Assembly (NCBI RefSeq): GCF_003704095.1
Contig: NW_020847516.1
Coordinates: forward strand, 248,001 to 312,000
DNA: 64,000 nt
Reading direction: 5' to 3'
DNA from: Pocillopora damicornis
Lineage: Eukaryota
Under the pieces are notes generated by a model. The model made no database searches. It saw nothing but the letters and a program-made list of their open reading frames with translations, and had not been told where the DNA came from. The position numbers were made by a program, and so were the translations under genes. Shown here one piece after another: positions 1,665-6,591 of the stretch; the stretch's first letter is position 1, and every line of letters starts with the position of its first letter.

Positions 1665-4600
1665 ATGATGCTGAGGCTTTCGTTTCGGAGAATCAAATTA
1701 TTCCATAATGAATTTCCTCTTGAGAAGCAGCTCAATTTGACAAAGCGATGTCTTAGTGATCATGTCAGCGGTAATAATTCAGGACAAGAAATTCAGGTAA
1801 TTTTATTTATTTTTATTTATTGCAATTCTTGGCATATACAATGCAAAACTAAATAAAACTAAACTAAAATAATTATAAATGATAGATATTACAGCCAATG
1901 GATAATCCGTGAAGAATTCATAGACCCCATACAAAGACGGATCACCATAATAAAAAAAAATATATATATATAAAAACTATATAAAAAATAAGACTATGAA
2001 TAATTAGATGAATAGATGAAATACTCCTGAAAAACTGAGTCAGAATTTAAATGGAATGTAGATCTATGATGTAAAAATATCTATAGATTATCCAATAAAA
2101 GAGATATTTGAAGTATCTCTGTCTGACAAACATATGTAACATCCAGAAAACAGGACAGACAGAAATAATCAGATCAAAGTACTCATAACTCTAATAGAAA
2201 TTTCTTAGCTCTAGTCTTAAATATTTTTAACTCAGCAGTATTGCAAATTTCTCTAGGTAAAAGATTCCAACTATCATATATTCTATGGAAAAGGCTATAT
2301 TTTAAGACATTTGTTTTAGCATACTTCTTTTTTAAGGTTAAGTTATCTTTATGTCTTAATGAAAATTGGTCAATCTCTGAATAAAAATCTATGTAAGAAT
2401 GGACACTAATTTTAATATAGCCATTTAGGGCCATAAATAAAAAATTCACATCAGCCAGCAGCCTCCTTTTCTCTAGTATCATGAGGTTCAATGTCTTTAA
2501 ACAAGTCTCCAAAGGGTCATCAGTTTTTTAAAATAAATCTGGTTGCTCTCCTCTGTACTCTTTCCAGTTTTTCAATATTCTTTTTAGTGTGCTGTGACCA
2601 CAAGTAAGATGCAGGGAGTGAAATCGTGACGTGAGTTTCTTCCCCAATGAACTGGAGAAAGGATAGATTTGAAAAACCTGAATCTGCAGCAACTCTAAGC
2701 CAATATTGCGTGGTTACATATCGACTAAAAAAGTTGCAAAGGGCTTTTAATGTTCCTACCGCTCGCCAATATATTCTTGAATTAGTACATGTAATCTATA
2801 AGAAAAAGGCTTTCCTCCTGTACTTTTTTAGAGATTTGGTCTTCTGACTCGTCTTGCCCTACTCAAGCAAAACCATCGCATGTAAATGGCTACTAAAACG
2901 TTCCATCCTTTCCAGCTTGCACCATAAGTTGACTTGGACGCATCAGTGAAATAGTTTCACCCGTTTTCGGTTGTCACAAAATCTCAGGATTGAACAGAAT
3001 TGATCAAACTCGAGGGCAATTTCCAAGAAGTTGGAGAACAGAGGCTCTACGTTTGGCAGGTTGCAATAGTTGCAATAGTCGTTATGTGAGCTCTTAGCAA
3101 ATTGACCAAACGAATTATGTACAAGCGTTCTGTAGCCACTAAGCATGCGGTTAAGATTGAGTCGAGTATATTCGCTGTTCTGGCTTCAAACCATTCAGAC
3201 ATCCTCCAATGGCCTTGTCATTCTCAACTCCTTCATATGACTTCCTCGGTGAAATCAGTGACCACTTTTAATTAAATCCTCAACTCATTTGAAACTATTT
3301 TGTTCCACTCTGAACGAAGTCCTGCTCTCGGAGTGCCCTTGGACATATTTTAATAACTGCTGAGGTAATTAATATGTGTTGATATCTTAATTGGTATACT
3401 TGCCGTTAATTTTCATCCTGCATAATTTTTTTTGTCTCAGTTGTTTTCACATACTTTATGTCTATTTTGTTCGTCGAGCGTTTCTCGCTTATCCATAAGC
3501 ACCGGCTCAGGAGTCTGGGTTAAGTCTCCCTACGTTTCGACATTCGATAAAGTTGATAATTATCATTATTTGTTAAGCAAGTACTCTTCCTCCCCGGTTA
3601 AAAAAACTTCAGGTTCCTCACAAAGGAAGTTATCGTCTCGAAGACTGCGACAATAGAAGAGAATGGGTTGAACAAGTTACTTCCGCTTCTCTATCAAACG
3701 TTGGACAGTGGTGGAATCCTAAACTATCCCAGGGGTATACAACTGAAAATCTCAAAGGGAACATAGAAAATCCGATAGGACTCGCTAAGATTCCCCAAGG
3801 TATAGCTGGGCCCTTGCTCATCAAAGGAGATCATGTGCACAATGAAATGATTCTATGTCCTATCGCCACAACCGAAGGGGCGATCGTTGCCTCTACGTCA
3901 AGGGGTGCCAAGGCCATCACAAGGTAAGTTGTGTGACCAGCTACCCAGACATTTAACGGGAGTAAGGCTGAAGGTTACATCATAATACAAACCTTGCTAC
4001 TTTTCATTTGTATTTTTCGGTGTTATTACAGTAACTATCCTCTCGTGTCTATCTTAATGAGGTCGATCTCAGCCTCGCTATTGTTTATAAGTCTGACAAG
4101 CAAGCAGCAAAAGGAGTTTCAAATGCAACGAGGCAGGGTGAGGGGAGAAAATTTGCGACGTAGATCCTTTGTGGAGGAAACGCAACATTTGTAATTGCTT
4201 CCTGCTACAGAAATCGGGATGAGCTCTGCTAGGCAACTATGTAAATAATTCTCATACATTATCGCCCACAATGCCTATTTTACCAGAGGAAATTTCCGTT
4301 TACATTCTTCCCGATGTAAACCATCCATTACCTACCTATACTGAAGGCTGTCTTCGTACACCTATTCTGTTTACTTACAGGTGCGGCGGGGTCTCCACAC
4401 GTGTCATAAAGCGCAGGATCCAAAGAGTACCATATTTTGTGACAGATTCCATGCAACAAGCCCAGAAATTATCACATTGGCTTCTGTCTCATTTTGATGA
4501 ACTGAAAGCCAAAGCAGGGGAGGTCAGCCAACACTGCAAGCTTCAGTCTCTGCAGCCCTGGTTCATTGGTTGGTAGTACTATGACATTTTTTAATTTCAT

Positions 4601-6591
4601 AGTTGTACAAAATCTAAATGATGATGGCTTATTATCTGATGTTTATTATACCTTTTATTTTGTAATTTCATCTACAAGCCAATCATCACCGGCATATGAA
4701 GAAGTAGCTTAAAGGGGGGGAAATTCGGGAAATAAAGTTTGACTCTGCGAAATATGTCTTTGTTTTGCTAAGGATAGTTTTAAGCTTTAAGAATTTTAAT
4801 TTGCACCGTTATCGATGGACAAGGAAAACTTACGACTGCCTAGGTTCGAACCTCTCGTGATTCCGATGTAACGGTTTGATGCTCTCATGGATCAGCTGAG
4901 GTATGATGAAGATCTAAGTTTGTGAGATAAGCCTCATGTCAGTTTCATTTGTGAAAAACGAACTGTTTGGATAGTTTTTAATATTTTTATAAAGTTAGTA
5001 CCGTAATACTGTCAAAAAGTGAAACATTCTGAAAATTTTAGGTCGCAACGTCATGATGGAATTTGTCTACGATTCTGCTGATGCCGCTGGCCAAAACGCT
5101 GTCACCGTTACCACTTGGTACGCTTGTGACTGGGCTAAAGAGAGGATCGCTCAAGAGTGCCCTGATATCAATATCAGGGAATATTACATTGAAACTAAGT
5201 TCAGTGGCGATAAAAATAACATTCCCAAAAACTATGTCACTGGGCGGGGAATTGAAGTTCAGGCCGAAACTTATATTACCGAGTCAACCCTTAAAAGTGT
5301 TTTGAAAGTAAGTGAATGTGATGGTTTGACGATTCTGTATGTCTCGTGAATATGAAAGATTCAATCACATGAAAATACATAGCCTTTTCTCGTGTCAAAG
5401 GGTCCCAGTTACGCTTCACGAGCAAAGCATAAAGGAATATCCTTCAGCTTTCAGCTTGTTTCGTGTCCTAATACCCTAAATTCTGTCTGGAACACCAGAA
5501 GGATGCTACTTAAGGAATGATGAGGTTTTTAACTCATTTCAAGATATGACCGTTCACAGACCTTTTCGCTGATGATGTGAACACCTGTCTGAGTATAATT
5601 CGTGTTTACAGGGCACCATTTATGTTACTTTCTCTAATACCTTTTTGCGCACATCAGATTGACTCCAAGAAGTTGGTTAAAGCCTTTAATGCTCTTGCAT
5701 TGAGTGCGCAGAGGTCTGGGTCCTGTGGTATTAATCAAGTTGTAAGCAACACTTTGGCGGCCATATTTACTGCAACTGGGCAGGATATTGCCTGTGTTCA
5801 TGAGAGTTCTTGGTCTGTGTTTGAGATATCAGCGGAAGAAGAAATAAAGATTCAGGCAACTGAGCACCGTAAGAGAAGAGGATTGTCTTTGTATAGTTTT
5901 GATCACAAACAACCCGTAAACACATTTATTGGTAACACGCAATTTTTTTATCAACACTGGACAGTGGACCCTATAACTAACTGATGTACCTTTTTAATTT
6001 GATTGAGATGGAGACCAACCTTTGTTATTTTAGGGAATGCTGGAATGAAAAGTGAAGCTGGTATCTATGCGTGTCTCGTTCTCCCCACCCTGTTAATTGG
6101 AACAGTGGGAGGTGGAACATACACACCGACCGCCAAAGAATCGCTGAATATGCTAGGATGCTTAGGAAAGGTGATAAGGAGGCTGTTGACTTTTTTTATC
6201 TCATGCATTGTAATAGTAAAACGATTAGGCATTAACCCTAAAACCTGCACAGATTTTCGGCGTAAACTACTGAGATATTTCGTAGGCGCCATGTGATTTT
6301 GAGAGTATTTTCCAATGTACACGGTTCTTTCGCCATCACAATCGCGCTGTAAATTTCTGAGCACTTTTTCAGAACACTTCCCCATAAAGTACAAGTAAAC
6401 TTGATGTATCTATATTTGCATTACCAAATATTATGTCAATGTATTTTTCCATCTTTCAGGGTCGCATTTATCGCTTTGCAGAAATAATCGCGTCATTTGC
6501 ACTAGCGATGGAAATATCTGCATTGTCAGCAATAGCCAGTGATCAGTTTGCAAGTGCGCATGATCGACTTGGAAGGAACAGACCGGAATAA
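1665..6591 (+). CDS. Class I HMG-CoA reductase-like protein, soluble bacterial type (no sterol-sensing membrane domain), ~458 aa, 7 coding exons
   Basis: Phase-compatible GT-AG exons 1665-1796, 3613-3923, 4381-4568, 5042-5307, 5658-5868, 6034-6170, 6460-6591 give one open frame. HMGR motifs: ENPIG, PIATTEGAIVASTSRG, DAAGQN, SGDK, TGQDIACVHES, GTVGGGT and C-terminal SAHDRLGRNRPE. Confidence 0.92.
1801..2613 (-). mobile_element. 5'-truncated CR1/L2-clade LINE (RT C-terminus plus 3' tail) in HMGR intron 1
   Basis: Translation ...NIEKLERVQRGATRFIL...LEKRRLLADVNFLF...KYSLFHRIYDSWNLLP is typical of a LINE ORF2 end; (AATAA)n-like tail at ~1801-1820. Confidence 0.85.

What the first reader, a model, noticed from the sequence alone, without database searches (positions are those of the whole stretch)
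1665..6591. Bacterial-type HMG-CoA reductase domesticated with six spliceosomal introns
Seen: a complete ~458-aa soluble class I HMGR without the N-terminal sterol-sensing membrane domain, with DAAGQN (animal enzymes have DAMGMN), TGQDIACVHES and a terminal HDRLGRNRP. It sits among eukaryotic genes and repeats. Known: canonical animal HMGCR is ER-anchored and about twice this length. Inference: the motif variants look like bacterial class I enzymes, suggesting an old horizontal transfer providing a second, sterol-insensitive reductase, possibly for isoprenoid or specialised metabolism.
Basis: partly seen in the sequence, partly recalled or inferred. Interest (0 to 1): 0.8.

Follow-up and report, generated by a model that had tools for sequence, protein, structure and literature searches.

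The report
Second, prokaryote-type HMGR-like reductase in coral
A stony coral expresses, beside its normal cholesterol-pathway HMG-CoA reductase, a short soluble relative of bacterial type; the lineage is ancient and was already noted in sponges, it was once fused to a kinase, and its altered substrate pocket suggests it no longer makes mevalonate.

Summary
Window 1665-6591 (+) holds an intact gene of 7 coding exons for a 458-aa HMGR-family protein. It is 456/458 identical to a Pocillopora meandrina database protein. All six GT-AG joints appear in poly(A) RNA-seq contigs from four studies. A 5' UTR exon splices in just before an in-frame TGA, so there is no upstream sterol-sensing domain. The canonical HMGCR lies on another contig.

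The protein does belong to a mainly bacterial family of ~800-aa fusions of HMGR with an EcKL/APH kinase. An AU test rejects a clade with the coral's own HMGCR (p 0.005).

It is not a coral-specific transfer. Corals fall in one eukaryotic clade (UFBoot 97) with sponges, chytrids, a colponemid, an annelid and a brittle star. Three coral introns match sponge introns: two exactly, one a residue off in a poorly aligned insert. The kinase half survives as a separate coral gene on contig C1700, also sharing introns with the sponge fusion, so the ancestral gene split.

Conaco et al. 2016 described this second HMGR in demosponges as "lost in other metazoans".

The catalytic E/K/D/H are kept. The HMG-carboxylate ligands Lys735 and Lys692 are lost, so HMG-CoA is doubtful as substrate. 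A mitochondrial presequence is predicted, not tested.

The parts
797..827 (+). 3' end of a non-coding 5' exon (its start was not determined); donor GTAAGT at 828
   Evidence: RNA contigs of runs X1 and X6 carry 30+ letters upstream of 1655 that match window 797-826 exactly.
1656..1796 (+). Exon with the start codon (ATG 1665). TGA at 1662-1664 is in frame just upstream. It encodes 44 aa of basic, presequence-like N-terminus.
   Evidence: Acceptor AG at 1654-1655. The joint 1796|3613 is seen in 4 of 4 RNA runs. Composition: +5/-2 in the first 25 aa, first acidic residue at 16, and an R-x-L|S motif at residues 28-31 (read from the sequence).
3613..3923 (+). Coding exon 2: start of the HMGR catalytic core, including ENPIG and ATTEG (catalytic Glu, 3865-3879)
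   Evidence: Pfam 73 bits, profile 2-81; best PDB match is archaeal 6hr7; the joint 3923|4381 is in 3 of 4 RNA runs.
4381..4568 (+). Coding exon 3 (holds the Arg590 equivalent in QRVP)
   Evidence: Pfam profile 80-144; the joint 4568|5042 is in 4 of 4 RNA runs.
5042..5307 (+). Coding exon 4: DAAGQN (5080-5097), the cis-loop SGDKNN (5203-5220; Asp690 and Lys691 kept, Lys692 replaced by Asn) and GRGIEV (5242-5259; Lys735 replaced by Ile)
   Evidence: The joint 5307|5658 is in 4 of 4 RNA runs. This intron's position and phase are identical to the sponge gene's intron 1.
5658..5868 (+). Coding exon 5: GINQVVSN (His752 replaced by Val, Asn755 kept) and TGQD (catalytic Asp, 5775-5807), followed by a coral-specific acidic insert
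   Evidence: the joint 5868|6034 is in 4 of 4 RNA runs.
6034..6170 (+). Coding exon 6: GTVGGGT (6099-6119)
   Evidence: The joint 6170|6460 is in 4 of 4 RNA runs. This intron's position and phase are identical to the sponge gene's intron 3.
6460..6591 (+). Coding exon 7: catalytic His in SAHDRLGRNRPE, then stop TAA at 6589-6591. In the fused relatives the kinase linker begins exactly here. An AATAAA lies at 6836.

Best explanation
This is an expressed nuclear gene of a Pocillopora coral. It encodes a soluble reductase of 458 aa with the class I HMG-CoA reductase fold. It is not a shortened copy of the animal HMGCR. It descends from an ancient eukaryotic lineage of a mainly bacterial family in which the reductase is fused to a C-terminal EcKL/APH-type kinase. 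In the lineage leading to corals the fusion gene split in two. The reductase (this gene) ends exactly where the kinase linker starts in the fusions and has gained a basic N-terminal extension. The kinase survives as its own 7-exon gene on contig C1700. Shown here: the gene model, its splicing and expression, its clade, the shared introns and the split. Inferred: the enzyme still carries out an NAD(P)H-dependent reduction of an acyl-CoA thioester to an alcohol, because the catalytic Glu/Lys/Asp/His and the DAxGxN and GTVGGGT motifs are intact. Also inferred: the acyl group is probably not HMG, because the positive residues that hold the HMG carboxylate are gone (Lys735 in the whole family; Lys692 and the residue after Lys735 in corals). 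Also inferred: the alcohol is then phosphorylated by the partner kinase, and the coral enzyme works in mitochondria, whereas the fused chytrid and colponemid forms carry peroxisomal -AKL/-ARL ends.
For: Gene model and identity to P0178. RNA: all six joints in poly(A) or oligo-dT runs from four studies, with exon depth well above intron depth. No upstream coding sequence. Family placement: the nearest non-coral relatives are HMGR plus PF02958/PF01636 fusions of bacteria, a colponemid, a sponge and chytrids. Tree support: family 99/96, eukaryote clade 97/89, corals 100/100. The AU test rejects a clade with canonical HMGCR. Introns: sponge and coral share VLK| (phase 0) and GCxGx| (phase 0), plus a phase-1 intron in the insert. 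Kinase gene on C1700: 37.5% identity to the colponemid kinase half and 36% to the sponge's, and it includes the linker motif. Three of its introns match the sponge's in position and phase. Active site. Role of Lys735 and Lys692: PMC9500038. NCBIfam score below the equivalog cut-off. Targeting signals. The same kinase type is fused to a different thioester-reductase domain (PF07993) in P0380 and P0387.
Against: No activity, substrate or localisation has been measured. The presequence call rests on composition only; no predictor was available. The coral kinase model starts with an acidic-containing N-terminus and has no PTS1, so the two halves are not shown to share a compartment. In bacterial and some other fused relatives an Arg follows the lost Lys735 and might take over carboxylate binding, so HMG-CoA is not excluded for them. 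The eukaryote clade has UFBoot 97 but SH-aLRT only 89 in the careful tree. The Owenia and Amphiura rows are long branches. Four rows inside the clade and the rows next to it are metagenomic proteins without an organism name. The canonical HMGCR row in the tree was built from 229 aligned residues of exon pieces.
Confidence: 0.72

Rival explanations
1. It is a true second HMG-CoA reductase: a soluble, sterol-insensitive enzyme that makes mevalonate for isoprenoids or specialised metabolites. This is the first reader's functional reading, and also the one offered for sponges in PMC4784904.
For: Full-length PF00368 match. All four catalytic residues, Arg590, Asp690, Asn755 and the cofactor motifs are conserved. 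The best NCBIfam model is HMG_CoA_R_NADP. Database sources name relatives as HMGR.
Against: The Lys735 equivalent is uncharged in 62 of 62 family members, against Lys or Arg in 22 of 22 class I enzymes outside the family. His752 is replaced. Corals also lack Lys692 and have Glu after the Lys735 position. The TIGR00533 score is 245 bits against a cut-off of 441.8. The ancestral fusion is to a non-GHMP kinase. No mevalonate-pathway genes were seen around 37 bacterial fusion genes.
Confidence: 0.2
2. It is a recent horizontal transfer from a bacterium into stony corals that was later furnished with introns.
For: The family is mainly bacterial, and among cnidarians only four scleractinian genera appeared in the searches.
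Against: Corals sit inside a eukaryote-only named clade rather than next to any named bacterium. Intron positions and phases are shared with the sponge Ephydatia in both the reductase and the kinase genes. No bacterial hit exceeds about 47% identity.
Confidence: 0.03
3. It is a decaying or non-functional relic (an expressed pseudogene).
For: The substrate-pocket residues have diverged and the kinase partner has been lost from the polypeptide.
Against: The 458-codon frame is intact and spliced poly(A) RNA is present in four studies. Only 2 of 458 residues differ from the P. meandrina protein. Identity across Porites, Oculina and Pocillopora is 70-78% with every catalytic residue kept.
Confidence: 0.04
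4. It is bacterial contamination or an assembly artefact.
For: None beyond the prokaryote-like sequence.
Against: The contig is 398 kb with eukaryotic repeats and neighbouring genes. The gene has seven spliceosomal introns confirmed by RNA. Exon GC is 45% against 36% in the introns.
Confidence: 0.01

Closest known systems
Prokaryote-like second HMGR of demosponges, Capsaspora and some fungi (Conaco et al. 2016, PLoS One, PMC4784904)
   Same: It is a second HMGR gene beside the canonical one and groups with prokaryotic sequences. The demosponges Ephydatia and Geodia fall in the same clade as the coral gene here. The paper proposed an ancient transfer into an opisthokont ancestor.
   Different: The paper calls it class II and says it was lost in other metazoans. 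Here it scores as class I type (TIGR00533 245 bits against TIGR00532 38 bits). It is present in stony corals, the annelid Owenia and the brittle star Amphiura. The kinase fusion, the PTS1 ends, the split and the pocket changes are not mentioned there. I did not have the Amphimedon sequence itself, so identity with that paper's gene is inferred from other demosponges.
Bacterial fusions of HMGR with an EcKL/APH phosphotransferase, about 800 aa (e.g. Zooshikella, Vibrio nigripulchritudo, Nocardia, Photorhabdus, Serratia)
   Same: Same HMGR subfamily (UFBoot 99) with 41-45% identity. The same signature is present: Lys735 replaced by Thr/Ile/Val and His752 replaced.
   Different: The coral protein has no kinase domain, has introns and an N-terminal extension, and has further lost Lys692. 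The function of the bacterial proteins is also unknown.
Canonical animal HMGCR (the same genome's copy on C2045; human 1dq8)
   Same: Same fold and the same catalytic tetrad.
   Different: The canonical enzyme has membrane and sterol-sensing exons, DAMGMN, Lys692, Lys735 and His752. Identity to it is 38% over 229 aligned positions. A common clade is rejected.
Archaeal class I HMGR (Methanothermococcus thermolithotrophicus, PDB 6hr7)
   Same: It is the best solved relative (E 3.6e-67, 230 bits) and is likewise short and soluble.
   Different: Archaeal and other class I enzymes outside the family keep Lys735 and His752. The coral protein lies in a different clade.
Soluble mitochondrial HMGR of trypanosomatids; ACAD10/ACAD11 (APH kinase fused to an acyl-CoA enzyme). 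Both are recalled from memory and were not tested here.
   Same: They are analogies only: an organellar soluble HMGR, and an APH-type kinase working in tandem with an acyl-CoA enzyme in mitochondria or peroxisomes.
   Different: No sequence relationship was examined. These are leads, not evidence.

Membership tests
HMG-CoA reductase family (Pfam PF00368) | Full-length match to the catalytic-domain profile | tested here: met
   Profile positions 2-368 of 368 are covered exon by exon, with each piece above or summing above the 27-bit cut-off.
HMG-CoA reductase family (Pfam PF00368) | Catalytic Glu559, Lys691, Asp767 and His866 (human numbering) | tested here: met
   All four are present in 6 of 6 corals.
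Class I (NADPH) as against class II HMGR | A better match to the class I model than to the class II model | tested here: met
   TIGR00533 scores 245 bits against TIGR00532 at 38 bits. The PDB hits are all class I.
Bona fide HMG-CoA reductase (NADPH), NCBIfam equivalog TIGR00533 | Score at or above the curated cut-off of 441.8 bits | tested here: not met
   245.4 bits for the coral protein. The bacterial fusion P0193 (290 bits) and the sponge protein (257 bits) are also below the cut-off.
Bona fide HMG-CoA reductase | Positive residues that bind the HMG terminal carboxylate (Lys735 salt bridge; Lys692) | tested here: not met
   Lys735 is replaced by Ile/Thr/Leu/Val and Lys692 by Gly/Asn/Ser in 6 of 6 corals; the next residue is Glu. 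The roles of these residues are taken from PMC9500038.
Bona fide HMG-CoA reductase | [quoted passage not shown] | not testable with these tools
   This needs an enzyme assay or yeast complementation.
Canonical animal HMGCR | N-terminal membrane and sterol-sensing domain | tested here: not met
   An in-frame TGA lies directly upstream of the ATG in the spliced mRNA. No PF12349 hit was found on contig C4151.
Canonical animal HMGCR | Phylogenetic grouping with metazoan HMGCR | tested here: not met
   The AU test rejects corals plus the same genome's HMGCR as one clade (delta lnL 50.6, p 0.005). Only one canonical eukaryotic row was available.
HMGR-EcKL/APH fusion family | The reductase domain falls inside the family clade and carries its signature (uncharged residue at 735; His752 replaced) | tested here: met
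   The family clade has support 99/96.
HMGR-EcKL/APH fusion family | A kinase domain on the same polypeptide | tested here: not met
   A stop follows GRNRPE at 6589-6591. The kinase homologue is a separate gene on C1700.
Peroxisomal (PTS1) form of the eukaryotic clade | C-terminal [SAC][KRH][LM] | tested here: not met
   The coral protein ends in -RPE. PTS1-like ends were found only in the chytrids, the colponemid, the unnamed family member P0026 and one 190-aa fragment (P0064), among 380 sequences scanned.
Mitochondrial matrix protein | Cleavable amphipathic basic presequence | tested here: inconclusive
   Composition fits in corals, Owenia and Amphiura. No dedicated predictor or experiment was available.

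The most novel reading that the evidence does not exclude
The coral gene is one half of an uncharacterised two-enzyme module that runs from bacteria to animals. An HMGR-fold thioester reductase makes an alcohol from an acyl-CoA other than HMG-CoA, and an EcKL/APH kinase phosphorylates that alcohol. The module is peroxisomal in chytrids and colponemids. In animals above sponges it was split, and the reductase was sent to mitochondria. That would make it an unrecognised organellar pathway retained by corals, some annelids and some echinoderms.
Probability: 0.35. Interest if true: 0.8.

Novelty: new variant of a known kind. Interest (0 to 1): 0.55.

Why it matters
Genome surveys count any PF00368 hit as HMG-CoA reductase, so this gene would wrongly be read as a second entry point to the coral mevalonate pathway. 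The evidence here points to a distinct and ancient reductase-kinase system of unknown product. It was reported only from sponges and declared lost in other animals, yet it persists in reef-building corals, an annelid and a brittle star. It offers a clean case of gene fission with a predicted change of targeting signal. It also gives a directly testable question: which acyl-CoA does an HMGR fold reduce once it has lost its carboxylate clamp? The evolutionary point is modest for specialists, because an ancient transfer was already proposed. The biochemical question is open.

Tried and rejected
- Joined model. The joined 458-aa model was never sent to a search tool. Exons were searched by reference, and the database protein P0178 (456/458 identical) stood in for it afterwards. 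Exons were joined only inside scripts, to count identity and intron phases and to build tree rows.
- Bilaterian introns and unnamed relatives. The closest non-coral relative, P0009, is not on record. The P0004 sample file was too large. The organisms behind P0008-P0010 therefore remain unnamed.
- Kinase gene model. The automatic splice model of the coral kinase gene mis-set several junctions. I rejected it and read the junction nucleotides directly instead. Only three kinase introns are claimed as identical. Two others lie 1-2 codons off, and one could not be placed.
- Bacterial gene neighbourhood as evidence against a mevalonate role. This is weakened. UbiA-like and PPDK-like neighbours recur beside the fusion genes (13 and 14 of 37 loci). 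But they also flank Lys735-bearing unfused HMGRs of Bacteroidota (9 and 8 of 36 loci).
- Literature. Searches for the fusion found nothing relevant.
- Rejected readings. Contamination, pseudogene and recent transfer were considered and rejected; see the rival explanations.
- Jobs not run. No structure or complex prediction was run, because sequence homology to solved HMGRs is already unambiguous. Complex prediction could not take the spliced kinase model.
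Full report
**What is there.** The window is G000:C4151:248001-312000, part of a 398-kb contig in a 234-Mb, 4393-contig assembly. Six open-frame pieces between 3577 and 6588 on the + strand match Pfam PF00368, and together they cover profile positions 2-368 of 368. Mapping the database protein P0178 (Pocillopora meandrina, 458 aa) onto the window gives seven coding exons. They lie at 1665-1796, 3613-3923, 4381-4568, 5042-5307, 5658-5868, 6034-6170 and 6460-6591. All six introns are GT-AG, with phases 0,2,1,0,1,0, and there is no internal stop. 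Of 458 residues, 456 are identical to P0178, so the genome is a Pocillopora or a very near relative.

**Expression and the 5' end.** I laid Logan contigs of four poly(A) or oligo-dT RNA-seq runs from four studies on 1600-6700. Five of the six predicted joints are present in all four runs and the sixth (3923|4381) in three. Exon depth is several-fold above intron depth. Two runs also carry letters upstream of 1655 that match window 797-826 exactly. A non-coding exon ending at 827 (donor GTAAGT) is spliced to 1656. In that mRNA the codon just before ATG 1665 is TGA (1662-1664). The reading frame therefore cannot extend upstream, and no sterol-sensing domain can belong to this protein. PF12349 has no hit on this contig.

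**The canonical gene.** PF00368 hits only two loci in the genome. The other, C2045:705-712 kb, has membrane exons and the animal motifs (CENVIGYMPVPVGVAGPL, GDAMGMN, GRGKSV, FNAHAAN). It is the ordinary HMGCR.

**Relatives.**
- Exon 2 was searched against 1.8 billion representatives, and the Porites orthologue against the 5.8-billion set. Orthologues turned up in Porites, Oculina, Desmophyllum and Pocillopora at 70-92% identity.
- The next hits, at 41-58% identity, are proteins of about 800 aa. In them the HMGR domain is followed by an EcKL/APH kinase (PF02958, PF01636).
- These fusions occur in many bacteria: Zooshikella, Vibrio nigripulchritudo, Nocardia, Rhodococcus, Photorhabdus, Serratia, Streptomyces, Myxococcota, Planctomycetota and Entotheonella.
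- They also occur in eukaryotes: a colponemid, the sponges Ephydatia and Geodia, and two chytrids.
- Kinase-less forms of 440-470 aa occur in the annelid Owenia (three copies) and the brittle star Amphiura.
- Against solved structures, the coral protein scores 230 bits to an archaeal class I enzyme, 140 to Arabidopsis and 111 to human.

**Phylogeny.** I built an HMM-guided alignment of 100 rows and 394 columns. It included three archaea, other bacterial class I enzymes and the same genome's canonical HMGCR, the last assembled in a script from HMM-aligned exon pieces (229 positions). This alignment gave a quick IQ-TREE tree. A 63-row subset gave a careful tree with bootstraps. Support values are UFBoot/SH-aLRT.
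- The fusion-type family is one clade (99/96).
- All named non-canonical eukaryotic copies, plus four metagenomic rows, form one clade inside it (97/89; SH-aLRT 99 in the larger quick tree).
- Corals are one clade (100/100).
- With the root on the canonical-plus-archaeal side, the eukaryote clade is nested among bacteria.
- Forcing corals together with the canonical HMGCR costs 50.6 log-likelihood units, and the AU test rejects it (p 0.005).

**Vertical descent and fission.** The sponge Ephydatia gene (L108) has nine introns. Two in its reductase part coincide in position and phase with coral introns...SVLK| at phase 0 and ...GCxGx| at phase 0. A third, at phase 1, lies in the same variable insert, one residue off in a poorly aligned stretch.

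The kinase half of the sponge protein matches a separate coral locus on the minus strand of C1700, at about 53.4-57.6 kb. That locus has seven exons and is 37.5% identical to the colponemid kinase half and 36% to the sponge's over its last exon. It carries the family motifs and the linker that in the fusions follows GRNRP directly. I read its junction nucleotides directly. Three junctions coincide with sponge introns in position and phase: F[R] at phase 2, PSK|EV at phase 0, and WTxx[R] at phase 2. Two more lie within one or two codons.

The coral reductase gene ends exactly where the fusion's linker begins. The simplest history is an intron-bearing fused gene in early animals that later split.

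**Targeting signals.** Among 380 sequences scanned, a C-terminal [SAC][KRH][LM] occurs in the two chytrids, the colponemid and one unnamed family member (P0026), plus one 190-aa fragment (P0064) that may be chance. All kinase-less animal copies instead carry a 45-85-residue N-terminal extension. It is basic (+3 to +6 in the first 25 residues) with few acidic residues. The fused forms begin with short acidic N-termini. This fits a move from peroxisome to mitochondrion, but it is inference from composition only. It agrees with another first-stage note (s1-785070).

**Active site.** Glu559, Lys691, Asp767, His866, Arg590, Asp690, Asn755, DAxGxN and GTVGGGT (human numbering) are all conserved. I screened for columns that are at least 85% conserved in class I enzymes outside the family but almost never carry that residue inside it. 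Five columns came out, and two are known pocket residues.
- Lys735 is Thr/Ile/Val/Leu (rarely another uncharged residue) in all 62 family rows, against Lys or Arg in 22 of 22 rows outside the family.
- His752 is mostly Asn in the family, and Ala/Cys/Val in corals, against His in 22 of 22 outside.
- Corals alone also replace Lys692 (Gly/Asn/Ser), turn Asn686 into Lys, and have Glu after position 735.
- Lys735 forms the salt bridge to the HMG carboxylate, and Lys692 is one of its polar ligands (PMC9500038).
- NCBI's equivalog model TIGR00533 gives 245 bits against a cut-off of 441.8. The bacterial and sponge fusions are also below it.

The chemistry (thioester to alcohol) is therefore probably retained, while HMG as the acyl group is doubtful, most of all in corals.

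**Bacterial context.** Around 37 fusion genes the recurrent neighbours are a PPDK_N/PEP-utilizer dikinase (14 loci), a UbiA-like membrane protein (13), an AMP-binding ligase, an MMPL exporter, a CarS-like protein and a CDP-alcohol transferase. No mevalonate-pathway genes were seen. This hints at a pathway from acid to CoA ester to alcohol to phosphate to transfer. The hint is weakened because UbiA and PPDK-like genes also flank Lys735-bearing HMGRs of Bacteroidota. Independently, the same kinase type is found fused to a different thioester-reductase domain, PF07993 (P0380, P0387). That supports a reductase-then-kinase logic.

**Literature.** Conaco et al. 2016 (PMC4784904) reported that demosponges have two HMGR genes. 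One clusters with prokaryotes and is also present in Capsaspora and some fungi. They proposed transfer into an opisthokont ancestor and loss in other metazoans. The present gene extends that lineage to corals, and database proteins extend it to an annelid and an echinoderm. The colponemid copy suggests an origin older than opisthokonts, or a further transfer. I found no paper on the kinase fusion, the PTS1 ends or the pocket changes.

**Verdict.** The "bacterial type" label is right at the family level. "Transfer into corals" and "second HMG-CoA reductase" are not supported. This is an ancient eukaryotic member of a reductase-kinase family, here in a split and retargeted form, and its substrate is unknown.

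**Limits.**
- There is no biochemical or localisation evidence.
- Several clade members are unnamed metagenomic proteins.
- Only one canonical eukaryotic HMGR row was available for the tree, and it was partial.

Noticed in passing
G000:C1700:53400-57650 (minus strand; loci L026, L027): A separate gene of about 7 exons encodes the EcKL/APH kinase that is fused to the reductase in sponges, chytrids, a colponemid and bacteria. It begins with the fusion's linker motif and ends in ...NELI, with no PTS1.
   Followed up: partly
window 1803-2600 (intron 1): A dispersed repeat with copies at 78-84% identity on at least five other contigs. It holds a 109-aa minus-strand ORF (2183-2512) with no Pfam match.
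   Followed up: partly
window 1212-1274: A short element of about 50 bases is present at 86-93% identity on more than 30 other contigs of the genome. It resembles a SINE or MITE fragment.
   Followed up: no
window 4501-5641: In one RNA run only (X1), two joints have CT..AC ends (4501>4834 and 4913>5641). They would be GT..AG on the minus strand, so there may be a spliced antisense transcript across introns 3-4 and exon 4.
   Followed up: no
window 18050-20088 (minus): Exons of a Peptidase M1 (aminopeptidase N-like) gene (PF17900).
   Followed up: partly
window 49262-51808 (minus): An uninterrupted 848-aa ORF has a Roc/Ras GTPase domain split by a long hydrophobic stretch that looks membrane-spanning.
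   Followed up: partly
window 35809-39374 and 57082-60572 (minus): Two pairs of similar ORFs about 21 kb apart (35809-36357 with 57082-57444; 38982-39374 with 60165-60572) suggest a tandem duplication of an unannotated gene. No Pfam match was found.
   Followed up: no
loci L062, L103, L107 and other Bacteroidota loci: Unfused class I HMGRs of about 400 aa that keep Lys735 also sit next to UbiA and PPDK_N/PEP-utilizer genes (9 and 8 of 36 loci). The HMGR-UbiA-dikinase module is therefore wider than the fusion family.
   Followed up: partly
proteins P0380, P0387 (metagenomic): The same kinase type is fused to a PF07993 (fatty acyl-CoA reductase-type) domain instead of an HMGR domain. This looks like a non-orthologous replacement of the reductase.
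   Followed up: no
window 25139-46020: Seven runs of N (100-153 bases each) mark assembly gaps. They were left untouched.
   Followed up: no
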